In this document: positions 25,235 through 62,199 of the stretch, in pieces
Layout of the letters: each line of letters starts with the position of its first letter
Numbering within the stretch: position 1 is the first letter of the stretch
DNA from: Isurus oxyrinchus
Lineage: Eukaryota
Length of the DNA stretch: 64,000 nt
Assembly (NCBI GenBank): GCA_026770705.1
Contig: JANJGN010000009.1
Span: 164,176,001 to 164,240,000, forward strand
Direction: 5' to 3'
Translations under genes and position numbers: made by a program
The notes under the pieces: model-generated
The model's database searches: none
Told to the model about the DNA's origin: nothing
Seen by the model: the letters and a program-made list of their open reading frames with translations, nothing else

Positions 25235-25559
25235 GTAAGTGTTACTTTCTACAAACAATGTGGCGAATGAATGTTTTAAATTCATGTCTATCCAAACTGG
25301 TCACTGGTTCAGTTCCTTCAGTTTATCTGAGAAATTGCAACTGGCCAAATTCACTCTCTCTGGTTCCTCAAACATTCTGAACAAGGTCACTAAGTTGCAT
25401 TTTTCATGAAAAATGGACAGGATCAGAAAATATCCCCAAAACATGCAAAAATATTGCCGAATCTCCAATAAACCCATCGAATCAAAATAGCATTTGATTG
25501 ACAGAGCTTTCATAAAGCAATTTGTCTATTTCCAGCAGATGGAATTGTGAAATGCAACC

Positions 25560-33268: not shown

Positions 33269-36200
33269 TATTATGATGCAGCTGAGCTAAATGCTGAGCG
33301 GTTCAAATCCAGGAGGGAAACTTGAACCAACTGTCATAACTAACTGTTGCAATTTGTATGATTGAAGATGCAGGCTTTAAATTCAGTAGTAATAAGACGA
33401 CTGAGTCTCAACAGGTTTTTATAAAACTAAATTAAACATTTATTAATACAAGAAAGATTGTGAGCACATGCATATGTTGACAAAATTACTACTATAATGT
33501 CTACAAAAATCCCCTAATTAATCTGGCTCCAAGTTATACCTCCGTTAAGGCATCAGTAAAACACATGGATTTAAACAGACCCTGGGCAAAGCTCACTCTG
33601 GACGGTCACATTCAAATTGAGTTTCTTTCAGCTCTGGCTCTTTGCAGACAGCGGCTTGAGGCTTACGGACTGGAGGCTTTAGTTCTTAGAATCGCTCTCC
33701 TTTTTACCAACAGCCTTCTAATCCTTTTTACACATTTTTCTCTTTGAATGCAATTTTCATTCTACCACTATTTCTTTTGAAATTTTAACTCTTCAAATAA
33801 TAAGACACTTTCATACGACCCACTTTATTAGTAATCCTTGGGAAAAATAAACAAACACACAGTTTCTGAGCTTCACCTGGTTAGGTGTAATATTTCACAC
33901 CATCTCTGAACCCAAGGTAGGGGAGTTAGTTTAAAGAAAAAATGCAAATTGCCCCCATATTTACCTAATTAACATTTCAAACCTATCCTTTTCTATACAT
34001 CAAAGCCTCTAGACAAGCTGGCTTTAATCCAATTAGGACACACACACACACAGAGGGCAGGATTTTCCAAGCCCGCTGGCAGCAGGTGTAATAAGTGGCA
34101 TGTGTGGATAATATGGTGTGAGCTGCTTCACAATGGCAGCATGAAGGCAGGTTGTGATCGTCCGCTCAGCCCACCTACAGCGGGTCGTGCTTCCCGCTAT
34201 CGGTCAGCGGGGAGCTAATTGTTATACATCAGCATGTAAATAAAAGGCCATCCTGCCAGGCTCTTGGAACCCGGCCGTATCCTCTGTCCACGTTAGCGGG
34301 AAAGCACGCCGACGTGATTCACAACAGCACACAGGCAATTTGTACCTGGTGGCCTTGACTCTGGGGGAAATGGGGTGAGTGAGCAGCAGTGTTCTCCACA
34401 GCTTGCCTGTTGTTTACAGGCTTCAGGGATGCCTGACCCCGGATGTGACTGCTGAGAGGGGGGTCTCCGGGGGGGGTAAGAGCTGGCCAGCCTTGAAATG
34501 CTGAGGGCAAGGTGTCTAGTGGCAAGTGCTGGCTGCCTTGGAGGTGGATACTGAGGGGGAGATGTCCGGGGTCATGTGATGATCAACCTCAGAGGCGAAT
34601 GGTGTCGGTGGCTCCATGCTCAGGACCATCTCAGATGCAGCCATTAAACTTAAGACGCATCTGGTGCTGCGTCCTCCTTCAGTACCTCAGCCCTTTCAGG
34701 AGCTGGTGCGCAGTATCACTGGTCACAGATGCTGGTGTGATGGGGGTCAGCCCCACCTTAAAGATGCTGAGAGCTCACAGAGAGAATGAGAGAACTCTGT
34801 GGGGCCTGCCCACTCCATTCTGGCAGCAATGCCCAGCACCGCCGAGGTGCGGGCATCAGTAATGTGTCCAGGGAGTGTGAGGCTGGACCATCACTGTTAT
34901 CTGAAGGTTGCACAGAGCACAGGGAAAAGGCCCTGGACTCATACACCTGCCCTTTATCTTACACAGGAAGGTTTCACATCTGAGTGACAAGAACACTGCT
35001 CATCAGAACAAGGAGCCACAGGCAGGGTGACATTCTTAGGAGTTTACCGACAATAGTGAACAATATGTACATGTGACCAACACCCGTACCCAGGCTGTGC
35101 AACTACATTTCCCTAACTTTCCTAACTCTGCCACTACATCTTGCTGCTCCCCGGACATCCACAGCAGAGGTGGAGCTAACCTGCTGCATGTGACGCCCTG
35201 TCTGTGATGACACTGGTGGGCGTCCTCTGGAGGGCTGAGACTTGGTGGGCCCCGGCCTGCTTTCGGGGTCCTGCTGTGTGGTAGTGGCCCCCTCCTCGGC
35301 CTGGGGGGCTGGAGCTGCTGAGATCCTAGGAAGAGGGGAGTCGGGTTGGCCAGTCACTCCCAGAACCTCCTGAGTCGATGGCCCCGGAGTGTGTACCTGC
35401 TGCTCCTCCTCCCTATCGGTGTCTGAGGGCCCCTGGCTGACTCTGAGAGCGGAGGATGTAGCTGGAGTGAGACTTAGCTAATTGTAACCCCTCTCTCATA
35501 CACACTGTTGGAGGCTAAATATAGCATCAGCGATGGAGTTCACAGTGCACAGCAGCACAGGAGTGACGTCCTGGGCCAAGGTCTCCATGGCAGCTGCCAT
35601 CCTGCCATTGTTGACCTCAGTGTATTGCAGCGCCGGAGTTATCACATCAGCCTGAAGATAGACAGTCCCCTCCATCATGCCTTGCAATCTGAGGAGTGCA
35701 GCGGGCATCCCTTCCTGATGTTCCCGAGCTTGCCTTTGCAATTCCAGTAACTGTGACATGACCGAGCCCAGAGGCTGTCATCTGACTCGGACTCAGCAAC
35801 ATTGTGGCCTCCAGCATCCTCTGAGGGGCAGGGGACCTGGGAAGTCCCTGCCTCCACCTGCTGTAGATCAAACAGTGCGATGTGCTCCCAGATTGTGATC
35901 CTCAGGCTACTCTAAAGCTAGGTCCCACTGAGGTGTGTGTCTCTGCGCTGGCAGAGGCTGTGGGTGAGCTCTGTGACGGAACTTCAGGGAGAGTGCCTTC
36001 AGATTCCTCTTCAGAGGTTTCTTCAGGAGACCCTGGGTCATGGACTCTGTCGGCTGCTTCCCAGATGTGTCTGTGAAAGCAAGGGGAGATAATGAGTGCA
36101 TGGCAGTGGCCTGTGATAAAGGACACATCACTCACAGCATGGTTATCTGATGGGTGTTGCACTGCTGGACCCTCACTTGATAGGGCAGTGCCAACCTTAC

Positions 36201-37139
36201 CATCAGCACAGGACCGGCCCCGATCATTGCCGGTCAGCTGGATGGCTCTGCTTTCGAATTCTGTCAGAACTTTGATCTCCGGCATCCCTCCACCTGTCTC
36301 TGACCTTTCCCCCCTGTTGTGTGCCAGTTTGTCCTGTGTGGATATGGATGGGGACAGTGTGTCAGGATGCCTGCAGGGGACAGATGATAAGTATGCCTGG
36401 CCTGTGTGGGTGGGGAGTGGTCCCGTGGACAGGGTGAGAACAATGAAGGTGTATGTGAACAGGTGAATGGTGATGTCCCTTGCACTGGCAGTGAGTGAGG
36501 GCCCTGTAGATGTGTGATGGGTTTGTGAAAAGAGTGACTTACCCTGGAGGAACGGAGGAGATCATTCATCCTTTTGCGGTACTGGGTGACTGTCCTCCTC
36601 TGCAGGACGTTCACACTGACCACCGCTGCCTCCACCTCCCAAGCCGGGTTGGGTACTTTGCTGCCCACCCTGCGGTCAGAGCGTGGGGTAGAGCACATGC
36701 CTGTGCCCCTCCACGGCATCCAGCAGTCGCTTGAGGGACCCATCAATGAAGCAGGGGTCTGCAGTCTTTTTTCCCTCTGCTGGCCATGTCTCCCAGGCAG
36801 GGGTGGTGAGCTGGTGGCGATGAGCGCTTTGATGGTAGCTGCCTTTTAAAGATGGTGGCCAGCGTGTTGTAACAGCGGGGTGATGGTGCGTGGGCGAATG
36901 AGAGCCCGCTTGCCATGGAAACGGTGTGTTTCACGGGGGTGAATAAATAATGAGCCGGGTTCGGGATGATATGGTGTGAAAACCCGTCATCTTCGTCGGC
37001 AGGTAGGACTCCATTTTACCCACCCGCTACCGCACTTAGTGCAATTCTGGGAAAATTCTGCCCACAGGTACAGACACCACTAAACTCTCATTTAAAATAA
37101 TTTCCAATAACATTATAAACATTAATATAACGCTTCACA
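33269..37139. mobile_element. Solo-LTR-like element, paralog of 2425-6294
   Basis: Duplicated sequence with the same CTTCA flanks. Confidence 0.5.
34055..37063 (-). mobile_element. Harbinger Myb/SANT element, paralog of 3211-6218
   Basis: Same TIRs and ORF fragments. Confidence 0.8.
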
Positions 37140-50273: not shown

Positions 50274-53200
50274 AAAAAACAAAAATACAAACAAAAAACT
50301 GCGGATGCTGGAAATCCAAAACAAAAAGTAAGAAATACCTGGAAAAACTCAGCAGGTCTGGCAGCATCGGCGGAGAAGAGCACAGTTGATGTTTCGAGTC
50401 CTGATGACCCTTCAACAGAACTAAGTAAAAAGAAGAGAGGGGTGAAATATAAGCTTGTCTAAGGGGTGGGGGTGGGGGTGCGGGTGGTGAGAGAAGGGGA
50501 GAGGTGGTTGTTGGGACAAGCAAGCAGTGATAGGAGGAGATAACCAAAAGATGTCACAGACAAAAGAACAAAGAGGTGTTGAAGGTGGTGATATTATCTA
50601 AAAGAATGTGGTAATTAAGAACGTATAGCAAGACAAGCAAGGTACAGATAGGTCATGTGGGGGTGGGGTGAAATAAGACTAAAAGGGCATAAAATGTATA
50701 GATAAATGATCAGTGGAATACATTAAAAATATTGCAAATAGGTGGGAAAAGAAAAATCTATATAAATTATTGGAAAAAAGAAAAAGGATGGGGAAGAAAT
50801 GGAAAGAGGGTGGGGATGGAGGAGGGAGTTCAAGATCTAAAATTGTTGATCTCAATATTCAGTCCGGAAGGCTATAAGGTGCCTAGTCGGAAGATGAGGT
50901 GCTGTTCCTCCAGTTTGCGTTGAGCTTCACTGGAACATTGCAGCAAGCCAAGGACAGACATGTGGGCAAGAGAGCAGGGTGGAGTGTTAAAATGGCAAGC
51001 GACAGGGAGGTTTGGGTCATTCTCTGCAGACAGACCGCAGGTGTTCTGCAAAACAATCACCCAGTCTGCATTTGGTCTTTCCAATGTAGAGGAAACTGCA
51101 TTGGGAGCAACGAATGCAGTAGACTAAGTTGGGGGAAATGCAAGCGAAATGCTGCTTCACTTGAAAGGAGCGTTTGGGCCCTTGGACGGTGAGGAGAGAG
51201 GAATTGAAGGGGCAGGTGTTGCACCTTTTGCGTGGGCATGGGGAGTTGCCATAGGTGGGGGTTGAGGAGTAGAGGGTGATGGAGGAGTGGACCAGAGTGT
51301 CCCAGAGGGAACGATCCCTATGGAATGCCACCGGGGGGGTGAAAGGAAGATGTGTTTGGTGGTGGCATCATGCTGGAGTTGGCGGAAATGGTGGAGGATG
51401 ATCCTTTGAATGTGGAGGCTGGTGGGGTGATAAGTGAGGACAAGGGGGACCCTATCATGTTTCTGGGAGGGAGGAGAAGGCGTGAGGGTGGATGCGCGGT
51501 AGATGGGCCGGACACGGTTGAGAGCCCTGTCAACGACCGTGGGTGGAAAACCTCAGTTAAGGAAGAAGGAGGACATCTCAGAGGAACTGTTTTTGAAGGT
51601 AGCATCATCGGAACAGATGCGACGGAGGCAAAGGAACTGGGAGAATGGGAAAGTGTCCTTACAGGAAGCGGGGTGTGAGGAGCTGTAGTCGAGGTAGCTG
51701 TGGGAGTCGGTAGGCTTGTAATGGATATTGGTGGACAGTCTATCACCAGAGATTGAGACACAGAGGTCAAGGAAGGGAAGGGAAGTGTCAGAGATGGACC
51801 ATTTGAAAATGATGGAGGGGTGGAGATTGGAAGCAAAATTAATAAATTTTTCCAGGTCCAAACGAGAGCATGAAGCGGCACCGAAGTAATCATCAATGTA
51901 CCGGAGAAAGAGTTGTGGGAGTGGGCCGGAATAGGACTGGAACAAGGAATGTTCCACATACCCCATAAAGGGACAGGGGCTCATGTGGGTACCCTTAGTC
52001 ACACCTTTTATTTGGAGGAAGTGAGAGGAGTTGAAGGAGAAATTGTTCAGCGTGAGAACAAGTTCAGCCAGATGGAGGAGAGTAGTGGTGGATGGGGATT
52101 GTTCGGGCCTCTGTTCGAGGAAAAAGCTAAGGGCCCTCAGACCATCCTGGTGGGGGATGGAGGTGTAGAGGGATTGGACGTCCATGGTGAAGAGGAAACA
52201 GTTGGGGGCAGGGAACTGGAAATTGTTGATGTGACGTAAGGTGTCAGAGGAATCACGGATGTAGGTGGGAAGGGACTGGACAAGGGCAGAGAAAAAGGAT
52301 TCAAGATAACGAGAAATGAGTTCCGTGGGGCAGGAACAGGCTGACACGATCAGTCTGCCGGGACAGTTCTGTTTGTGGATTTTGGGTAGGAGGTAGAAGC
52401 GGGCCGTCCGAGGTTGGGCGACTATCAGGTTGGAAGCTGTGGGAGGAAGATCCCCAGAGGGGATGAGGTCAGTGACAGTCCTGGAAACAATGGCTTGATG
52501 TTCAGTGATGGGGTCATGGTCCATGGAGAGGTCAGAGGAAGTGTCTGCGAATTGACGCTCAGCCTCTGTGAGGTAGAGGCCAGTGCGCCAGACAACAACA
52601 GCACCACCCTTGACAGCGGGTTTGATGACAATGTTGGGGTTGGATCTGAGGGAACGGAGTGCAGTAAGTCACAAAACAACTGTTTGCTGAAATGCTAAAC
52701 AAAGATAAATATTGAGATAAAAGCAAAGAACTGCGGATGCTGGAAATGCAAACCAAAGACAGAAATAGAAATATCTGGAAAAACTCAGCAGGTCTGGCAG
52801 CATCGGTAGAGAAGAGCACAGTTGATGTTTCGAGTCCTCATGACCCTTCAACAGAACTAAGTAACAATAGGAAAGGGGTGAAATATAAGCTGGTTTAAGA
52901 GGAAGGTGGGTGCGTTGTTGGGACAAGAAGCCAGTAATAGGTGGAGATAACCAAAAGATGTCACAGACAAAAGAACAAAGAGGTGTTGAAGGTGGTGATA
53001 TTTTCTAAAGGAATGTGCTAATTAAGGGTAGAAAGCAGGACAAACAAGGTACAGATAGACCTAGTGGGGGTGGGGTGGGGTGAAGGAATACTAAAAATTC
53101 TAAAAATTAGAGATTAACAGTGGATGGAAATACATTTAAAAATAATGGAAATAGTTGGGAAAAGAAAACTCTATATAAACTATTGGAAAAAACAAAAAGT

Positions 53201-55705
53201 GGAGGAAGAAACGGAAAGGGGATGGAGATGGCGGTTGGGGCCAGGGAACTGGAAATTGTTGATGTGACATAAGGTGTCAGAGGAATCACGGATGTAGGTG
53301 GGAAGGGACTGGACAAGGGGAGAGCGAAGGGAGTCAAGAAGAGAATTGAGTTCCGTGGGGCAGGAAGAGGCTGACACGATCAGTCTGCCGGGACAGTCCT
53401 GTTTGTGGATTTTGGGTAGGAGGTAGAAGCGGGCTGTCCGAGGTTGGGAGACTATCAGGTTGGAAGCTGTGGGAGGAAGATCTCCAGAGGAGATGAGGTC
53501 AGTGACAGATCTGGAAACAATGGCTTGATGTTCAGTGGTGGGGTCATGGTCCAGGGAGAGGTAGGAGGAAGTGTCTGCGAGTTGACGCTCAGCCTCCACA
53601 AGGTAGACGTCAGTGCGCCAGACAACAACTGCACCACCCTTGTCAGCGGGTTTGATGGCAATGTTGGGGTTAGGCCTGAGAGAATGGAGTGCAGTATGTT
53701 CAGAGAGAGACAGGTTAGAATGGGTGAGAGGAGCAGAGAAATTGAGACGACTAATGTCACGCCGACAGTTCTCAATGAAAAGATCAAGAGAAGGTAAGAA
53801 TCCAGAGGGAGGGGTCCAGGTGGAGGGAGAATATTGGAGGTGGGTAAAAGGATCCGTTGAATGGGGAGAGGACTCCTGCCCAAAGAAGTGAGCCCGGAGA
53901 CGAAGACGGTGGAAGAAGAGTTCAGCATCATGCCGAGCCCGAAATTCATTGAGGTGAGGACGTAAGGATATGAAACTAAGTCCTTTGCTGAGCACTGAAC
54001 GTTCAGCATCAGAGAGGGGAAGGTCAGGGTGTATAGTGAATACCCGACCGGGGCTGGGATTGGAAGATGGGGTGGGGACAGAGGGACAGGCAGGGTTGGA
54101 GGGTCCTGGATGTGTGTTGGTATCACTGAGTTGTTGCAGCTTGCGTTCCTTAGCACTTGAGAGAAAGAGAAAAGGTTTCTTGTTGAGGCGACGGATGAGA
54201 CGAAGAATAGAATGAAACTGGGGGCACGGGCAGCTTTGGAAAGGGGTACGGCGATGCTGCTGGAGGGAGAGGTCGAATGTGTTCATATGGCAGCGCATGG
54301 CACTGAGTGTGGATCTCAGAATGCAACGGGAACAGTATTCCGAGGAATGTTGTATGTCCCAGAGATACCTGTAATCCTGGGTTGGTTCGAATCCGATGGA
54401 ATTTCAGTTGAGATCCACATGGGGTAAGTCGGAGACGGAGACAGTCACTGAGAAAGGAAATATGGCTGTGAAAGCGGGTTTTAGTAAACACCTTGTCAAA
54501 CACCAGGAGAGAAATGGAAAGCAATGAAGGTAAATAAGGCAAAAGAGAGATATGAAAATCCTGACGGAGAGTAGTACAAAACTTCTTTAAGGTAGGGATG
54601 TCTTGAAGAGAAGTGGCAGTCAATTAAACACGGATAAAAGCAAAAAACTGCGGATGCTGGAAATTCAAAACAAAAACAGAAACATAAATAGCTGGAAAAA
54701 CTCAGCAGGTCTGGCAGCATCAGCGGAAAGAGCACAGTTGATGTTTCGAGTCCTCATGACCCATCAACAGAACTAAGTAAAAATAGGAGAGGGGTGAAAT
54801 ATAAGCTGGTCTAAGGGGTGGGGGTGGGTGGTGGTGGAGGGAGAAGTTGTTGGGACAAGCAAGCAGTGATAGGAGGAGATAACCAAAAGATGTCACAGAC
54901 AAATGAACAAAGAGGTGTTGAAGGTGGCGATATTATCCAAAAGATTGTGCTAATTAAGGATGGGTAGCAGGACAAGCAAGGTACATGGTGGCATCATGCT
55001 GCAGTTGGAGGCGGAAATGGCGAAGAATGATCCTTTAGTGCGGAGGCTGGTGGAGTGATAAGTGAGGACAAGGGAGACCTCTTCATGTTTCTGGTAGACT
55101 TGCTGCCTTCTTCCAGTGAAGCTCAATGCAAACCGGAGGAACAGCACGTCATCTTCCGACTAGGCACTTTAGAGCCATTGGGACTGAATATTAAGTTCAA
55201 CAATTTTAGATCATAAACTCCCTCCTCCATCCCCACCCCCTTTCTGTTTCTTCCCCCTCCTTTTTCCTTTTTCCAATACTTTATATAGATTTTTCTTTTC
55301 CCACCTATTTCCATTATTTTTAATGTATTCCACCGATCATTTATCTATACCTTTTAAGCCCTTTAAGTCTTATTTCACCCCACCCTCCACTAGAGCTATC
55401 TGTACCTTGATTGTCCTGCTATCCATTCTTAATTAGCACATTCTTTTAGATGATGTCACCACATTCAACACCTCTTTGTTCTTTTGTCTGTGACATCTTT
55501 GGGTTATCGCCTCCTATCACCGCTTGCTTGTCCCAACAACTACCGCCGACTTCTCTCTCCACCGCCCCCCCCGCCCCCCGACCCATTAGACCAGCTTATA
55601 TTTCACCCCTTTCCTATTTTTACTTCGTTCTGTTGAAGGGTCATAAGGACTCTAAATGTCAACTGTGCTCTTCTCTGCCGATGCTGCCAGACCTGCTGAG
55701 TTTTT
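50274..55705 (-). mobile_element. Penelope-like retroelement array (RT plus GIY-YIG endonuclease) with tandem and inverted pseudo-LTRs; present only in copy B
   Basis: RT FTMDVQSLYTSIPH..FLRYIDD (51553-52524, and N-terminal part 53180-54298); GIY-YIG NLVYCIRC...LYIGKTK.RLGDCFAEH (50872-51331); four pLTR copies; candidate TSD CCAGGTTGG(A/G)GAGT at 50260 and 55706. Confidence 0.93.
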
Positions 55706-56086
55706 CCAGGTTGGGGAGTTCTGGGTGAGGGTTTGAAGGAGCCAGCCTGTATCCTTTAAAGCTGCTCCCAAAATCACACAACCCAGGAACGCAGTTGGGA
55801 ATCCCAGAATTAGGACACACCCGCCATTTTTAAAGGGCTCCTGAATCAACCCAAGTTGGTGAAATCCAGGCGGTCACTTTGGTCTGAAGGCTGCACAAAG
55901 CACAGGGTAGAGGTCCTGGACTGAGACACCTGCCTTTATCTTGTACAGAAAGTGTTCACATGTGAGTGACATGAACATTGCTCATCAAAACAAGGAGCGA
56001 TAGGCAGGGAGACATTCTTTGGAGTTTATTGACAATAATGAACAGTATGTACAAGTGATTAACACCCGTGCCCAGGACGTGCAACT

Positions 56087-56225
56087 GGCCTAAATAGCCA
56101 AGTGGTTATGGTACTGGGTTTGTAACCCCAAGATCAGGAATTCAAATCTCACAATGGCAAAATATGAAACAATGTAACTTGATCTGAATAGGAACAGATG
56201 GAAATGTGTTTGTACTCAAAAGAGT
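56087..56225 (+). mobile_element. tRNA-headed (Thr-TGT-like) short SINE or tRNA pseudogene
   Basis: A box TAGCCAAGTGG, anticodon arm tggg-tttgtaa-ccc with TGT in the loop, B-box-like GAATTCAAATC; acceptor stem does not pair well; followed by a tail ending AAAAGAG. Confidence 0.7.
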
Positions 56226-56239
56226 TACATTTCCTCAAC

Positions 56240-56426
56240 TCTCGACGCCTTCCGTGCTCAGTGGGGACTGGGGTGCTTTATTGACCCCTTTTAGCACTTT
56301 TTGGTTTAAAGTTGTAAGTTTCCTTTAAACTTCGTTCTTGGTTTTACAGCTGACCTAAATTAGGGGCTGTCCCTTATTTATCCTAATTTTGTAAATTTAG
56401 TTTAATTGTTTTGACTCTATAAGAGT
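56240..56426 (+). mobile_element. Tx1-type 3' end, stacked unit 2
   Basis: Similar to 57063-57259; bounded by target repeats at 56226 and 56427. Confidence 0.85.
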
Positions 56427-56440
56427 TACATCTCCTCAAC

Positions 56441-57259
56441 CCCCGTAATATGAGCCGCCTCGGGGACATGTCCTCTGTGCCATTTGGCACAGCAAAGAGG
56501 AGCTTTTTGTATGGACTGCTGCTGCACATCTTCCATTTTCTCGCCCTTGTCCGCCGCCTGGATATGCCCTGGCATGCCTTGTTGCCTTCCGGCAGCGGAG
56601 GCCCCCGATGGGAGGCCCTCTGAGGAGGTGTCCTCCCCCTTTCTATTGGGGACCTGGGTTCGAGGGTGTTGCATGCAGCAGTCCCCTATAATAGGAGAAT
56701 TCATAGGTTCACGGACTCCCAAGACACATGCCCTTTTCGTGGTCTTGTGGAGTCCGTGGACCATGCATACATAGGGTGTGGTAGGTTGCACTCCCTTTTC
56801 AGTTACTTGATGAACCTTTTGTTAATGTTTTGTTTGCACTTCAGCCCCACGCTCCTGATCTATGGACACCCGGTGCGGAAGGGGGTCGGAAAGGAGGAGG
56901 ACCTCCTCGTGAACCTGCTCCTGGGCCTGGCCAAGTTGGCCATTAACAGGTCCAGGCAGCAGGCGATCGAAGGGGGAGTCCCGCCCAATTATTTATCCCT
57001 CTTCCGCGGCTACGGTCGCAGCCGGATGTCCCTGGAAAGGGAGCATGCGGTGTCTGCCGGCACTCTCGAACCCTTCCGTGCTCGGTGGGCACCGCGGGGA
57101 CTGGGGTGTTTTGTTGACCTCTTTTATCACATTTTGGTTTAAAGTTGTAAGTTTCCTTCAAACTTTGTTCTTGGTTTTACAGCTGACCTGAATTAGGGGC
57201 TGTGCCTGATTTATCCCAATTTTGTTAATTTAGTTTAATTGCTTTGACTCTATAAGAGT
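56441..57259 (+). mobile_element. Tx1-clade non-LTR retrotransposon, ORF2 C-terminal fragment plus 3' UTR, stacked unit 3
   Basis: LSIGDLGSRVLHAA..TCPFRGLVESVDHAYIGC..LLLGLAKLAI (decayed CCHC knuckle and L1/Tx1 C-terminus), ORF 56666-57142. Confidence 0.85.
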
Positions 57260-57273
57260 TACATCTCCTCAAC

Positions 57274-57470
57274 TCTCGAGACCTTCTGTGCTCGATGGGT
57301 GACCACGGGGGTTGGGGTGCTTTATCCAGCCTCTTAATCACATTTTGGTTTGATGTTGTAAGTTTCCTTTAAATCATGTCTTTGGTTTTGCAGTGACCCT
57401 AACTTAGGGGCTGCGTTTTATTTTGTTCCTCATTTTGTTAATTTAGTTTATTTGTTTGGCTTTAAAAGAG
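57274..57470 (+). mobile_element. Tx1-type 3' end, stacked unit 4 (closest to 20020-20236)
   Basis: Shares diagnostic sequence with the copy A insertion; bounded by target repeats at 57260 and 57472. Confidence 0.85.
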
Positions 57471-59016
57471 CTACATCTTCTCAACTTTCCTAATCCTCCC
57501 GCTACATCTTGGTGCTCCGCAGACATCCAGAGTGGAAGTAAAGACAGTCTGCTGACTGCTATGCTCTGTCTGTGATAATTTTGGCGGGCGTCCTCTGGAG
57601 GCCTGAGGCCTGGAGGGCCCCGGCTTCCTTTCGAGGTCCTGCTGTGTGGCATTAGCACCCTCCTTGGCCTGTGGACCTAGAGCTGTCAAGGTCACAGTAA
57701 GAGGGGAGTTACCAGGATGAATGGCCCCGGAGGGTACACATGTTGATCCTTCTCGCTATTGGCTGAATTAGCGAGCAGCAGGGGTAGCTGGAGTGAGATT
57801 GAGCTGCCCGCACCCCTCTCTCATACACACTGTCAGGGGCCAACTATACATCAGCAATGGAGTTCAGCCCCACAGCAGTGTAGGAACGGTGCCCTGGACC
57901 AACATCTCCAAGGCACCTACGATCCTACCAGTGTTGACCTTGGTGCATTGACATGCCAGCGCTATCACCTCAGAGTGCAGGTGGATGGATTCCTCCATAT
58001 TAACTGAAAATTTTATTTAAAAAGAGAGAAGGTCACCATCTAATCCTTTATTAACTGTGTTTAATTGTATGCAGTGGTAGCATTAAATAGATGTCTTCAG
58101 GTCTGGGCCTTGTACACACTGTCTCCTGGGAGTTCTGACCAGCTACCCTGCTGTCTTCAGGGAGATCTGGCCAACCATCCTGCTGTGTTCTGGGAGATCT
58201 AAGCAGCTACCCCCTCACATAGGCTTCAGTATTCCCTTAAATGTGTTTCTTCTCTTTCATCTCTCTTTGTTGCAACCAGTCTGAAAAGAAATGCTTTTCT
58301 TCAAAGGATTGATTAAATCAATCTTTACCTCTTAGACTTGTAAAAACAAACTTACTCTATGTTTATGTCACGTCCTTACACCTTTTTACAACCTGCATAT
58401 ATCTCCCTTTGAACTAAAACAACACAATTCAAACTATTTCTGTTATTGCTTCATGTACAAATCTGTTGTAGTTCTTTTTTGTTTATTAACATATCAAAAC
58501 CACTCCAAATTGTTGACTTTTGACCCTATCCACTGATGAGGCAGTCCATGTCATGGAACCATAACCTTAAATCTGGAGATAGGCTCGTCAGGGATGTCAG
58601 GAATCACTTCTTCACGCAAAGTATAGCGGAAATCAGGAACACTCTCCTCAAAAAAGCTCTTGAACTTAAATGAAAATTTCAAAACTGATTGACAGATTTT
58701 ATCTGGTAGCAATATTCGGGTTATGGGACCCCGGTAGGTAAATGGACAGAAGATACTGGTCAGTTGGGATTTAATTGAATTGTGGAACAGGCTGAAGGGG
58801 CTGCATGTCCGAATCCCTTTTCCATGTTCTGGAGCCCCAGTTAATTTTTCAGTGGTCTGGGCCTTGTGAGGAACAATGTGCTGTGAAACAAGCTCACAAA
58901 CAGTTAGCATTTCAAAGAGACACTTTCCAATCACCAGGCAAACTGTGACCTGTGTTGTTTCAGAGTACAGTTTGTGACAGTGAAAGCAGTGAAGGCCTGC
59001 CAAACCTCATTAAAAT

Positions 59017-59156: not shown

Positions 59157-60627
59157 CTCATTAAAATGTTGGTGAAAGTGTCACTTTTCTCTGGCTAATC
59201 CCTTGACCAAAGAGGGAATTTTAATTCCCCTCCCCCATCCTGCATCGTGTTGAGGCATGATGGGATTTGCTGGATCCAGAACCTTCTCCAGCACGGCTTG
59301 TGATCCAGGAGACACACGAAAGCTTCGCCCCCCCACCCCCAGGCAAATGTTTTATACAATTTCTCCCTCCCCATGATTGGCCAATCCTGCCCCAAGCAGC
59401 AAAGTCACCCTGACTCCCTCCTCGCTGTTGTGCTCCGAGGCAACATTCCCACCAATTTCCAAACTTTTACCATAACCTTCCTACTTGGAAACCAGCCAAA
59501 CATTCAATCAGTGTGCAAGAATTCTGGTGAGATTTTGCTGTTAAATTCGGCACAAACTCAACATTCCTGGTATTTCCAGCTTTCTCACCACCCCACACAC
59601 AGTCCCCCCTCTCGTCTCCACGTACCAGGGTTGAAGTGTTCTATCGCAGCATGCAGAGAACCAGAGCCAATCACATTTACATTCTTATCCAAAGCTACAA
59701 AACATGTAACCGATATCTGACAACATTTTGCCCTCATTTTACCCTTTGCTTTTCTAAGATTCTCTCCAACCAATTCACATTCAACTCACAAACAATGAAG
59801 TAGCATTGGAGGCTCACTACCAGCTACGAAGAGATATTGTTCACCATCATATTCATGTTAACATACTCTCAGTATCATAGCTGCTGTTCTGATCTGGAGA
59901 CCTGATATGTTCTGATATAATGGCTGAAAGGGTAACTCAGGCCTCTAAGAGGATGGAGAGATATGGGGATGGATTTTTAAAAAGTATGGTGTCAGGATTA
60001 GAGATGGGTGGGTGTGAAATTTGACACCGCTGGTCTCCATGCCAATTTACTGTTACAATCCCAAGCCCGAAACATTTAGAAAGCAGGCGGCTTGCAGTCA
60101 AGTGGTGGGCAGCTAACTTAGGAAATAACATTTACCAAAGGGGCCAATTAAAGACCCATTCCTGCGCCCACTGGGATTTCATTCAGCAATGCAAGCAGAC
60201 CACATTACCCCTTCAGGATCATGGCCCGGCAGCTGCCGGGTTTTGAAACATAAAATAAACTTACCTGGACTTTCCCCTTGCTGTCTCCATGCTCAGGTCA
60301 GCAACTCCCACCTCACCTGGTGAGGCCCTCTAGCATCAGGAGCCCGCCCTCTGTCCCTGATTGGAAGGTGAGCCAGTTCCAGTCTTTTGATTGGCAAGAA
60401 CATTGAAAATTGCAGTGGGCATGCCTAAAGAATGGTGAATGGTGTCAGGACCTGAAACAATCTCCCATGTCCAGTTCCCAAACCCAAATTTAACATCCAC
60501 CCCATAGAGTGGTAGATGTGTTGGTGAGATTCCAACATGGCAGAGCCTGGCTGAGATGAAGTGCAAAGTTTGAAGAGTATTTGATTATTAAATGTTCAGT
60601 ATCTGAATGTTTCTTTCTTTCCAACAG

Positions 60628-60957
60628 AACCCGTGTCTGTTCCTGTGCTTAGATTTTCATCACCAGCAAATGTCTCATGTTCTGGGGGTTCAGTGTCCGT
60701 CTCCTGTGAGTCTGTCCAGGGATCCCTTCCCATTCAGTACACATGGTATGAAAAGAACCTGTCTGAAGATTCAAAGATCTCTGACACCAATAAACTGGAT
60801 CTACATTGTCAATCCTTCAAACAGCAACATCATCAACATTACTGCACAGCCTCGAATAATCAGGGAGTAAAATCCAGTGACACTGTCACTGTTAACTCAA
60901 CACTCATGAATGTAACAACGAAAAGCTACAGTTATGTGATACAAATTGGAAATATTG
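60628..60957 (+). CDS. CD300/pIgR-like receptor copy B, exon 3 (Ig C2-like domain)
   Basis: Paralog of 24905-25234 with intact frame and splice sites. Confidence 0.95.
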
Positions 60958-62199
60958 GTAAGTGTTACTTTCTACAAACAACGTGGCGAATGAATGTTTT
61001 AAATTCATGTCTATCCAAACTGGTCACTGTTTCAGTTCCTTCAGTTTATCTGAGAAATTGCAACTGGCCAAATTCACTCTCTCTGGTTCCTCAAACATTC
61101 TGAACAAGGTCACTAAGTTGCATTTTTCATGAAAAATGGACAGGATCAGAAAATATCCCCAAAACATGCAAAAATATTGCCGAATCTCCAATAAACCCAT
61201 CGAATCAAAATAGCATTTGATTGACAGAGCTTTCATAAAGCAATTTGTCTATTTCCAGCAGATGGAATTGTGAAATGCAACCTCCAACTGTTGTGTCCTA
61301 GTTTGGGAAGGATATCACTGATAGAATAGAGAAGAATTGAATTAAAATGAACCCTTGGATGAGAGGTTTTAGTCATGAGGAAAGTATCATCACAACTGAG
61401 GTGAATGACCAGCTGGAGGACGTGGAAATTGTTAGAAATTTGGATAAGGTAACTCTAACTATTTCCACTAGTCAGTGAGTCAGCAACAAGAGAGCATTAA
61501 CTTTAAAATTATCACTAAAAGGACAAAGGGAGAAATTTGGAGAATTTTATTGATGCAAACTGTTTTTAGGACATGGAATGCCCAACTGAAATAAGTTTAC
61601 AAACAAATTTAATAATAGATTTTAAAAGGGAAACAAATGTATGAGGGTGTGGGAAAAGGACAATGAAATGGAATTAAATGAGGAGATCATTCAGAGAACC
61701 AGCATTCGAGTGATGGGCTGAATTCCCTCCCCTGTGTTGTAAAAATTCCATCATTCCAGTCAAAATCTCAAATTATCCTGTATAAAAAATTAACTATTCG
61801 CTCCCCATAAAACAATGACCCTGGTTCTGAAACAAGGATGACTTTAGCCTATTTGAATGTAGCGGTTCAATTTTCTGCAGAGTGGGTGCAGCATGTTCAC
61901 CGAGAAACACCAACATGGGCACAAAACAAAGAGAATCACATTTTCACCTGAGCAGCAGGAGACAGGAATTTACATATGCAAATATATTGACTCTGGTCAT
62001 GTGGTCTCTTGCCTCAGTCGTCAGGGAAGAAGGGTGGAATTTTACACCCCCATTGCGGCAGGGACTGGGCTGTAAAATGCAGCCAGCCATTCTAAACTCC
62101 ATGCACTCCAGCAGGACCATAAAATCCCACTGTCACAAGGCTCAGACCAAAGGCTGTCAGCAGCAGGTAGAAATTACACCTGTAAACTGTGTTTGTACT

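What the first reader, a model, noticed from the sequence alone, without database searches (positions are those of the whole stretch)
56081..57490. Site-specific Tx1-type retrotransposon stacking at the stop codon of a Harbinger Myb/SANT gene
Seen: four inserts lie head-to-tail, each ending in AAGAG and followed by a copy of TACATYTYCTCAAC (56226, 56427, 57260, 57472). The three Tx1 inserts differ in length and sequence, so they are not a simple tandem duplication. In paralog A the same site holds one insert with a 15-bp TSD (20005/20237). The related Harbinger copy has an empty, diverged site (CTACATTTCCCTAAC, 4257-4271). On the minus strand the target reads ...RKVEKM* / RKVREM*, the apparent end of the transposon's Myb/SANT gene. 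Known: Tx1-clade endonucleases are often sequence-specific, and Xenopus Tx1L/Tx2L target the DNA transposons Tx1D/Tx2D. Inference: a Tx1 family uses a PIF/Harbinger transposon as its dedicated landing pad. The TSD regenerates the target and restores the gene's last codons and stop, so the host gene stays intact and reinsertion can repeat. I do not know of a description of this pairing.
Basis: partly seen in the sequence, partly recalled or inferred. Interest (0 to 1): 0.88.

Follow-up and report, generated by a model that had tools for sequence, protein, structure and literature searches.

The report
Tx1-like LINE stack in a DNA transposon
Several truncated copies of a Tx1-like jumping gene, plus a small partner element, have inserted one after another at exactly the same 15-base site at the end of a gene carried by a DNA transposon; this is a clear example of a habit already described for Tx1 elements in frogs and crocodilians.

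Summary
At 56087-57485 a tRNA-headed SINE and three 5'-truncated LINE 3' ends (186, 818 and 197 bp) lie head to tail. Each ends in AAGAG and each is followed by a copy of YTACATYTYCTCAAC. A diverged copy of the host repeat has the site empty (4257-4271). On the minus strand the 15-mer is the last four codons plus stop of an ORF.

The best reading is repeated target-primed insertion by a sequence-specific Tx1-like LINE, with the target duplication restoring the site.

- "Paralog A" is the same locus, copied by a ~30-kb segmental duplication inside the window. It is not independent.
- The pairing is published. Kojima 2015 (PMC4494074) reports Tx1-9_AMi in Harbinger transposons, and Tx1-Mar with partner SINEs in a Mariner, with tandem inserts sandwiching a target duplication.
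- Harbinger/Myb identity is only weakly supported here: no Pfham hit, no transposase, candidate TIRs only.
- Reads show most host-repeat copies have the site empty. Most SINE copies lie elsewhere, and few copies of the LINE 3' UTR seem to run into this target. A second hot spot lies inside the SINE. A "dedicated landing pad" is not shown.

First readers noted the same theme at seven other places in this genome. Four are ~1.4-kb stacks nearby, probably paralogous copies. Verdict: new member of a known kind.

The parts
55873..56086 (.). Host repeat, the part lying 3' of the ORF's stop codon (left flank of the target).
   Evidence: 98.6% identical to 19793-20004 and 84% to 4044-4256. Read depth is about 4000 at roughly 4% sampling of each run. 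1106 reads continue with the empty-site sequence.
56087..56229 (+). tRNA-headed SINE, outermost layer of the stack. It ends ...AAAAGAGTTACA. Only CT of the target remains on its 5' side, so it has no 15-bp duplication.
   Evidence: Rfam tRNA covers the full model at 56088-56159, 19.4 bits, below threshold. Depth is about 11,000-13,700. Its last 29 nt align with the LINE tails in 24 of 29 columns.
56225..56239 (+). T1, target copy TTACATTTCCTCAAC.
56240..56425 (+). ins2: 186-bp 5'-truncated LINE 3' end. It starts at TCTCGA and ends CTCTATAAGAG.
   Evidence: 91% ungapped identity to 57064-57258.
56426..56440 (+). T2, target copy TTACATCTCCTCAAC, identical to T3.
56441..57258 (+). ins3: 818-bp 5'-truncated LINE. 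It holds the last 158 codons of ORF2 (56666-57142, CCHC knuckle decayed) and a 116-bp 3' UTR.
   Evidence: BLASTP against TX1-named ORF2 proteins: residues 1136-1285 of 1298, E 2e-21, and E 8e-15. phmmer gave 149 hits. Reads continue upstream of 56441 with a 0.98-agreement consensus, so longer copies exist.
57259..57273 (+). T3, target copy TTACATCTCCTCAAC.
57274..57470 (+). ins4: 197-bp LINE 3' end of a different subfamily (ends GGCTTTAAAAGAG). It is the oldest layer and is shared with copy A.
   Evidence: 95.9% identical to 20044-20236, and 82% to ins2 and ins3.
57471..57485 (+). T4, the target copy still joined to the ORF. On the minus strand it reads GTT GAG AAG ATG TAG (VEKM stop).
57471..57695 (-). 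Last open segment (74 aa) of the host repeat's gene, ending ...RIRKVEKM*.
   Evidence: It is homologous to 4257-4511 and to 20237 onward.
20005..20251 (+). Copy A, the same locus in the other unit of the segmental duplication: target, one LINE 3' end (20020-20236), target.
4257..4271 (+). Empty target CTACATTTCCCTAAC in a diverged copy of the host repeat. Its duplicate is at 35103-35117.
3211..6218 (-). Candidate complete host element (copy C, about 3.0 kb). It is bounded by 17-nt inverted ends GGGCAGRATTTTCCSAG and carries a decayed multi-exon Myb-like gene. There is no transposase ORF.
   Evidence: Inverted ends are at 3211-3227(+) and 6202-6218(-), 5 matches against 0.7 expected. The Atlas lead is Myb_DNA-bind_5 at 0.88 for ORF 5422-6000. 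Pfam gave no hit.

Best explanation
A sequence-specific, or strongly site-preferring, Tx1-like non-LTR retrotransposon has inserted repeatedly by target-primed reverse transcription at one site of a multicopy TIR-bounded DNA transposon. That transposon carries a Myb-like gene and is probably a transposase-less Harbinger derivative.

The inferred steps are these. The endonuclease nicks the bottom strand at or just after CAA|CTACA. This lies directly 3' of the gene's stop codon, and the LINE is antisense to the gene. The top strand is cut 10-15 nt further on, after CTCAAC. The target is therefore duplicated on both sides of each 5'-truncated insert.

The copy of the target that keeps the native left-hand context (GTGCAA) is hit again each time, so layers are added outward. 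The order is ins4 first (it predates the segmental duplication), then ins3, then ins2, then a partner tRNA-SINE that shares the LINE's 3' tail.

Shown here: the anatomy, the empty site, the different subfamilies and truncation points, and the Tx1-like ORF2 tail. Inferred: the nick positions, the order of events, the endonuclease as the source of specificity, and SINE mobilisation by this LINE.
For: - Four elements lie in one orientation. Each ends AAGAG and each is followed by the 15-mer.
- The empty site in copy C shows the 15-mer belongs to the host repeat. The commonest state genome-wide is also empty: 1106 reads continue from 56086 with ACTTCTTCTTAACTTTCCTAAC....
- The inserts differ in extent (186, 818, 197 bp) and belong to distinct subfamilies. 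Each subfamily has its own genomic read support. Depth is about 80-200 on ins2, 1100-2500 on ins3 and 180-300 on ins4, and the reads' consensus differs from the window copies.
- No other copy of the LINE 3' end or of the SINE exists in the 64-kb window. All copies present sit at this one site.
- T2 and T3 are identical, as expected for the duplication made by ins3.
- ins3 ends with the C-terminal 158 codons of an ORF2. Its full-length relatives have APE + RVT_1 + zf-RVT, and two are named transposon TX1 149 kDa protein.
- The behaviour is documented for the Tx1 clade. Examples are Tx1L in Tx1D, Tx1-Mar/SINEU in Mariner-N4_AMi with tandem insertions sandwiching a TSD, and Tx1-9_AMi in Harbinger (PMC4494074; PMC1950540).
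Against: - Genome-wide specificity was not measured. The one read-laying run did not list the loose ends at the LINE 3' junctions.
- Depth falls from about 2500 (57151-57221) to about 680 (57222-57292). That suggests only a minority of ins3-like 3' UTR copies continue through the last 22 nt into the target.
- About 480 reads per run join the ins3-like 3' UTR, through a different terminus (TCATTTAAAAGATT), to position 56133 inside the SINE. Close relatives therefore use another target.
- At most about 2% of SINE copies continue into this target, and SINE 3' flanks are heterogeneous and AT-rich.
- ins2 and ins4 share the same 5' truncation point. ins4 is 24 nt shorter at its 5' end than its counterpart in copy A. 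Some gene conversion or rearrangement inside the stack is therefore likely.
- Only two independent host-repeat lineages can be inspected in the window: C (empty) and A/B (filled).
Confidence: 0.75

Rival explanations
1. The specificity lies in the RNA, not only in the endonuclease. On this view the element's transcript carries target-like nucleotides at its 3' end: at least TTACA, possibly the whole 15-mer by read-through from a source copy sitting in the same site. These nucleotides anneal to the nicked target. The downstream '15-mer' would then be partly or wholly element-derived and the true duplication would be shorter, about 10 bp.
For: - The SINE consensus runs through ...AAGAGTTACA at thousands of unrelated sites. 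Loose ends and SINE-to-SINE joints begin at 56228-56230, not at 56224.
- Three 15-mers that follow an element start TTACA, whereas the native site starts CTACA.
- In both A and B the downstream 15-mer has CTTC where the upstream ones have CTCC. That fits a downstream copy templated by the ins4-type RNA.
Against: - The empty sites show that the full 15-mer pre-exists in the host repeat.
- At SINE-in-SINE joints the element ends ...AAAGAGT and is followed directly by ATCAGG, without TACA (table 5c).
- The CTTC/CTCC pattern is equally explained by one mutation before the segmental duplication.
Confidence: 0.15
2. The stack arose locally from a single insertion plus its flanking 15-mer. Tandem duplication or unequal crossing-over copied the unit, and divergence and deletions followed. 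It would not be a series of separate retrotransposition events.
For: - The locus lies in a region of active segmental duplication.
- ins2 and ins4 have the same 5' end.
- The 15-mers differ from each other about as much as old duplicates might, 0-3 of 15 positions.
Against: - ins3 is 623 bp longer than its neighbours on both sides.
- ins4 is only 82% identical to ins2 and ins3, while the surrounding duplication is 94-98.6% identical.
- Each type is backed by its own set of genomic reads, whose consensus differs from the window copy.
- The outermost unit is a SINE, not a LINE fragment.
Confidence: 0.05
3. Hitchhiking. One or a few ancient insertions were spread by transposition of the host DNA transposon and by segmental duplication. 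The apparent recurrence at the site in this genome, including the other first-reader notes, would then be copy number rather than targeting.
For: - Copy A and ins4 are one event copied by duplication.
- Four other notes describe stacks of nearly identical length (1398-1416 letters) within 650 kb upstream. They are likely paralogous copies.
Against: - Within this one locus at least three further, different elements were added after ins4, at the same nucleotide and in the same orientation. Hitchhiking cannot produce that.
- Kojima 2015 used the same argument, 5'-truncated copies of different length, to reject hitchhiking for SINEU-3.
Confidence: 0.05

Closest known systems
Tx1-9_AMi in Harbinger DNA transposons of Alligator mississippiensis (Kojima 2015, Genome Biol Evol 7:1702, PMC4494074)
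   Same: A Tx1-clade LINE is preferentially inserted at a fixed position of Harbinger-type DNA transposons.
   Different: - Their target lies about 300 bp from the transposon's 5' end. Here it is the last codons and stop of the Myb-like ORF, about 1 kb from one candidate end.
- The host lineage differs. The nearest named relatives of this LINE are from whale shark and sawfish.
- No sequence comparison with Tx1-9_AMi was possible.
Tx1-Mar LINEs and SINEU-3 in Mariner-N4_AMi of crocodilians (Kojima 2015, PMC4494074)
   Same: - A Tx1 lineage and a partner SINE share one target in a DNA transposon.
- The TSD is about 16 bp.
- Tandem insertions sandwich a TSD.
- Both target-site duplication and target-site truncation are seen.
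   Different: - 90% of SINEU-3 copies lie in the target.
- Here the tRNA-SINE is overwhelmingly elsewhere.
- The SINE head is tRNA-like, not snRNA-derived.
Tx1L in Tx1D of Xenopus laevis (Garrett 1989; Christensen 2000; as cited in PMC4494074 and PMC1950540)
   Same: A LINE with an APE-type endonuclease nicks one specific sequence inside a non-autonomous DNA transposon.
   Different: - Tx1D is a piggyBac-type element.
- Endonuclease specificity was shown biochemically there and is only inferred here.
R1/R2 in 28S rDNA and other target-specific non-LTR elements
   Same: There is a fixed target in a multicopy sequence. RNA 3'-end/target complementarity may play a role.
   Different: The target here is a selfish element rather than a host gene. 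R2 uses a restriction-like endonuclease.

Membership tests
Tx1 clade of non-LTR retrotransposons | ORF2 with an APE-type endonuclease, a reverse transcriptase and a C-terminal Cys/His knuckle. | tested here: inconclusive
   Only the last 158 codons are present (56666-57142). They align end to end with the C-terminus of about 1290-aa proteins that carry Exo_endo_phos + RVT_1 + zf-RVT. The knuckle reads C..R.......H....C, so one Cys is lost.
Tx1 clade of non-LTR retrotransposons | The RT domain groups with Tx1 rather than L1 in a phylogeny. | not testable with these tools
   No RT domain lies in the window and no reference set is at hand. Indirect evidence only: two relatives are named 'transposon TX1 uncharacterized 149 kDa protein' by their sources (Oryzias, Takifugu). 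None of the 20 hits looked up is named L1.
Tx1 clade of non-LTR retrotransposons | TPRT hallmarks: variable 5' truncation, a defined 3' end and target-site duplication. | tested here: met
   5' ends lie at three different element positions: ins3 at 56441, copy A's insert at CATGCGG, and ins2/ins4 at TCTCGA. The 3' end is the common AAGAG. Copies of the 15-nt target flank the inserts.
Target-specific LINE (Kojima 2015 criterion) | More than 20% of a family's flanks are one kind of sequence. | tested here: inconclusive
   In the window 4 of 4 LINE 3' ends are at the target, but they lie in one duplicated locus. The read summary did not list the junction loose ends. The depth drop across 57222-57292 suggests a minority of ins3-like 3' UTR copies reach this target.
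PIF/Harbinger DNA transposon | DDE transposase (DDE_Tnp_4 / PIF type). | tested here: not met
   No candidate ORF lies in or next to any of the four copies in the window (six-frame ORF list; ORFs of the copies scanned). The copies could be non-autonomous derivatives.
PIF/Harbinger DNA transposon | A second gene encoding a Myb/SANT-like DNA-binding protein. | tested here: inconclusive
   - Pfam gave no hit even at E 10.
- The word-based homologue search found none.
- The AlphaFold single-sequence model was unusable, pLDDT 49.
- The ESM Atlas nearest named clusters are all Myb_DNA-bind_5/4 at 0.88 with 170 shared features, which is a lead only.
- By eye the ORF has the AW..V...V......RT..Q.RKR.NDL pattern and a following TGGG motif (recalled resemblance).
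PIF/Harbinger DNA transposon | Terminal inverted repeats and a 3-bp TSD (usually TWA). | tested here: inconclusive
   17-nt inverted ends lie at 3211-3227 and 6202-6218, and in the duplicate at 34055/37047. The flanking triplets are AGA and ACA: not identical and not TWA.
tRNA-derived SINE mobilised by the LINE | A tRNA-like head with an internal promoter, and a 3' tail shared with the partner LINE. | tested here: inconclusive
   - Rfam tRNA scores 19.4 bits (gathering score 29) but covers the full model. ARAGORN finds nothing.
- The tail matches in 24 of 29 columns; 4 of 500 shuffles reach the score.
- Copy number is very high by read depth.

The most novel reading that the evidence does not exclude
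This genome may hold a recent radiation of closely related Tx1 lineages. They would share most of the 3' UTR (at least 85% identity), but their last ~20 nt and their targets would co-vary. One lineage ends ...CTCTATAAGAG(TTACA) and enters the transposon's VEEM-stop site. Another ends ...TCATTTAAAAGATT and enters position 56133 of the tRNA-SINE. First-reader notes suggest a third in U1 snRNA genes. If the terminal nucleotides mimic the target, this would be a natural series for studying how APE-type LINEs are retargeted.
Probability: 0.3. Interest if true: 0.5.

Novelty: new member of a known kind. Interest (0 to 1): 0.3.

Why it matters
The locus is a clean, layered record of a site-specific LINE re-using a target that its own duplication regenerates. 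The empty site, the order of events and a partner SINE are all visible in one locus.

It extends the known habit of Tx1-clade elements, which parasitise DNA transposons, to another vertebrate lineage and to another position in the transposon. It introduces no new principle.

Practical value: it warns that such stacks get multiplied by segmental duplication and must not be counted as independent events. It also points to a set of sister lineages with different targets that could be used to study endonuclease retargeting.

Tried and rejected
The contigs behind the closest protein hits (P0001-P0003) could not be fetched, so independent 3' flanks could not be read.
- **Metagenome scan** with a conserved 18-nt LINE 3' UTR pattern gave 120 loci. 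None had any BLAST similarity to the locus, so all are chance AT-rich matches.
- **Homologue search** with the Myb-like ORF found nothing. The tool's length window (0.55-1.75x) also excludes full-length proteins.
- **Pfam** on eight ORFs of the host repeat and the LINE tail, and again at E 10, gave no relevant hit.
- **AlphaFold** on the 193-aa Myb-like ORF gave mean pLDDT 49. It was unusable and no fold search was run.
- **ARAGORN** found no tRNA in the SINE.
- **Generic inverted-repeat search** missed the candidate TIRs. They were found by eye and confirmed by pattern search.
- **Read laying** printed only the best-supported joints and loose ends. Those at 57258/57273 and 57470/57485 were not among them, so the key genome-wide ratio could not be read off.
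- **Chance** was rejected as an explanation: there is one shared nucleotide position, one orientation and four different elements.
- **Other first-reader notes** were not accepted as independent support, because four of them have almost the same length as this stack.
Full report
**What is there**

Between 56087 and 57485 the plus strand carries four retroelement pieces head to tail.

| Element | Coordinates | Notes |
|---|---|---|
| SINE | 56087-56229 | tRNA-like head |
| ins2 | 56240-56425 | 186 bp |
| ins3 | 56441-57258 | 818 bp |
| ins4 | 57274-57470 | 197 bp |

Each piece ends in AAGAG and is followed by a 15-mer.

| 15-mer | Coordinates | Sequence |
|---|---|---|
| T1 | 56225-56239 | TTACATTTCCTCAAC |
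| T2 | 56426-56440 | TTACATCTCCTCAAC |
| T3 | 57259-57273 | TTACATCTCCTCAAC |
| T4 | 57471-57485 | CTACATCTTCTCAAC |

The 14-nt pattern is over-represented in the window: 10 matches against 2.3 expected, and no shuffle reaches 10. All exact matches lie at element junctions.

**The inserts are LINE 3' ends of different kinds**

ins3 contains an open frame of 158 codons (56666-57142) followed by a 116-bp 3' UTR.
- A full HMMER scan found 149 relatives.
- The long relatives are about 1290-aa proteins with Exo_endo_phos, RVT_1 and zf-RVT. The window ORF aligns with their extreme C-terminus: residues 1136-1285 of 1298, E 2e-21, including the Cys/His knuckle.
- Two relatives are named 'transposon TX1 uncharacterized 149 kDa protein' by their sources, in Oryzias and Takifugu. 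The closest named ones, about 60% identical, are from whale shark and sawfish.

'Tx1-like' is therefore reasonable. It rests on annotation transfer over the C-terminal domain, not on an RT tree.

ins2 matches the ins3 tail at 91% (ungapped). ins4 matches either at only 82%.

Public reads of the same species and a sister species give each type its own support. Depth is about 80-200 on ins2, 1100-2500 on ins3 and 180-300 on ins4. At many positions more than 90% of reads differ from the window copy. Upstream of 56441 the reads continue with a 0.98-agreement consensus. ins3 is thus a 5'-truncated copy of a longer, abundant element.

**The target belongs to the host repeat**

A diverged copy of the same repeat (copy C, 4044-4603; duplicate at 34890-35451) has the site uninterrupted...gtgcaaCTACATTTCCCTAACtttcc.

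In the reads, 1106 per run leave the window sequence at 56086 and continue ACTTCTTCTTAACTTTCCTAACCCTGCCGC. The empty site is therefore the commonest state in the genome, and the family-majority target is CTAC(T/A)TCTTCTTAAC.

On the minus strand every version of the 15-mer reads four codons plus a stop (VEKM*, VEEM*, VREM*; the family majority reads VKKK*). Each stands at the end of an open segment: 57471-57695 and 4257-4511. The LINEs are antisense to this gene and lie directly 3' of its stop codon.

**Copy A is not independent**

A self-comparison shows that 1-28280 and 30845-64000 are two units of a segmental duplication, with 92-98.7% identity block by block. The finding's locus (B) and 'paralog A' (20005-20251) are the same position in the two units.

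| Segment | A vs B identity |
|---|---|
| Left flank | 98.6% |
| Insert | 95.9% |
| Right flank | 94-96% |

In both units the downstream 15-mer has CTTC where the upstream ones have CTCC. This argues that ins4 was already there before the duplication.

B then gained ins3, ins2 and the SINE. It also gained a 5.6-kb retroelement block at 50237-55872.

First-reader notes list four more stacks of almost the same length (1398-1416 letters). They lie 9, 221, 572 and 644 kb upstream. I read these as further paralogous copies, not as independent events. I could not inspect them.

**How it most likely works**

The layers are best explained by repeated target-primed reverse transcription at one sequence. 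The bottom strand is nicked at or just after CAA|CTACA. The top strand is cut after CTCAAC. The stretch between the two cuts is duplicated.

The oldest layer (ins4) is next to the gene and the youngest (the SINE) is outermost. Re-insertion therefore seems to use the target copy that keeps the native left context (GTGCAA). T2 and T3 are identical, as expected for the duplication made by ins3.

The SINE has only CT on its 5' side. That means a target-site truncation, or a very short stagger, rather than a 15-bp duplication. Kojima also reports both outcomes.

Details that do not fit a simple series:
- ins2 and ins4 begin at the same element position (TCTCGA, 2-nt AC microhomology).
- ins4 lacks 24 nt that its counterpart in A has.

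Some conversion or deletion inside the stack is therefore likely.

**How much of the '15-bp TSD' is target**

The SINE consensus runs through ...AAGAGTTACA at thousands of sites. Loose ends and SINE-to-SINE joints start at 56228-56230. The three 15-mers that follow younger elements begin TTACA, whereas the native site begins CTACA. The first 1-5 nt may therefore be copied from the element's RNA. That would leave a true duplication of about 10 bp and 4-5 nt of element/target homology. This rival mechanism is not excluded.

**Is the transposon a 'dedicated landing pad'? Not shown**

- The host repeat is abundant, with depth about 4000 on the left flank, and its copies are mostly empty. From the drop in consensus agreement (0.77 against 0.84) I estimate very roughly that no more than a fifth of copies are filled.
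- The SINE has depth about 11,000-13,700. Only about 200 continues past 56229, and its 3' flanks are heterogeneous and AT-rich.
- Depth on the ins3-type 3' UTR falls from about 2500 to about 680 in the bin that contains its last 37 nt and T3.
- About 480 reads per run leave at 57236. They continue TCATTTAAAAGATT and then join position 56133 inside the SINE. About 1100 reads join a SINE 3' end to the same position.

Close relatives of this LINE, and the SINE itself, thus have a second preferred site in the SINE's B-box region (CCCAAG|ATCAGGAATTCAAATC). A first-reader note made the same suggestion independently.

**Is the host a Harbinger with a Myb/SANT gene? Plausible, weakly supported**

- Copy C is bounded by 17-nt inverted ends, GGGCAGRATTTTCCSAG, at 3211-3227 and 6202-6218. 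The pattern has 5 matches against 0.7 expected. The element is about 3.0 kb.
- It holds one decayed, intron-containing gene on the minus strand and no transposase ORF.
- Pfam finds nothing in any segment. The word-based search finds nothing. The single-sequence fold was unusable.
- The ESM Atlas places ORF 5422-6000 next to Myb_DNA-bind_5 clusters at 0.88, which is a lead only.
- By eye the ORF shows the AW..V...RT..Q.RKR.NDL pattern, a GTGAGT donor and a following exon with TGGG. This resembles Harbinger Myb-like/NAIF1-type proteins as I recall them.
- The flanking triplets (AGA and ACA) are not a clean TWA duplication.
- All copies in the window are pseudogenes, so 'the host gene stays intact' applies only to the reading frame's end.

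**Comparison with what is known**

Many Tx1-clade families are target-specific. Xenopus Tx1 sits in Tx1D, a non-autonomous piggyBac, and its endonuclease nicks that site in vitro (PMC4494074; PMC1950540).

Kojima 2015 reports the following in crocodilians:
- Tx1-Mar families and SINEU elements share a target in Mariner-N4_AMi.
- The TSD is about 16 bp, and tandem insertions 'sandwich a TSD'.
- Hitchhiking was tested and rejected using 5'-truncated copies.

The Tx1/Harbinger pairing, the stacking and the partner-SINE idea are therefore all published. What is particular here is the host lineage, the position of the target (last codons and stop of the transposon's gene), the clean four-layer record, and the hint of sister lineages with different termini and targets.

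**Verdict**

The feature is real and well preserved, and the mechanism is understood by analogy. It is a new member of a known kind.

Confidence in the site-specific TPRT reading is 0.75. Interest is 0.3.

Masked N runs (10066-10228, 40696-40858) were left untouched.

Noticed in passing
window 1-28280 vs 30845-64000: The window is two units of a ~30-36-kb segmental duplication, with 92-98.7% identity by block. Unit-specific insertions include a 5.6-kb block at 50237-55872 in the second unit.
   Followed up: partly
window 56132/56133 (inside the SINE): Reads show a second insertion hot spot. About 1100 reads per run join a SINE 3' end (...CTCGAAAGAGT), and about 480 join an ins3-like LINE 3' end with a different terminus (...TCATTTAAAAGATT). 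Both join directly to ATCAGGAATTCAAATC at 56133.
   Followed up: partly
window 56086-56230: Head-to-tail SINE dimers are common in the genome. Joints run from 56228-56230 back to 56086, about 900 reads per run.
   Followed up: no
window 50237-55872: This block is specific to the second unit and has internal direct and inverted repeats. ORF 51556-52668(-) has a weak RVT_1 match (E 1e-5). By eye its N-terminal motif resembles Penelope-like elements.
   Followed up: partly
window 7737-8847 and 38583-39585: A 27-bp minisatellite of about 41 copies at 86-90% match. It is open in several frames (Ser/Thr/Ala- or Glu/Val-rich).
   Followed up: partly
window 18602-19048, 48990-49490, 24862-25377, 60585-61100: Immunoglobulin-domain exons lie in both units of the duplication: V-set at E 3e-10, and Ig_3/Ig_2. 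The region looks like a duplicated immune-type receptor cluster.
   Followed up: partly
window 3211-3227 and 6202-6218 (also 34055-34071, 37047-37063): 17-nt inverted ends GGGCAGRATTTTCCSAG bound the ~3.0-kb Myb-like-gene element. The flanking triplets AGA and ACA are not a clean duplication.
   Followed up: partly
window 13173-13556 and 43466-43984: These are fragments of another LINE, with a weak APE endonuclease match (E 0.002). It is unrelated to the Tx1-like element.
   Followed up: no
window 10369-11428 and 40859-41851: A CA-rich 68-bp tandem array lies next to the masked N runs.
   Followed up: no
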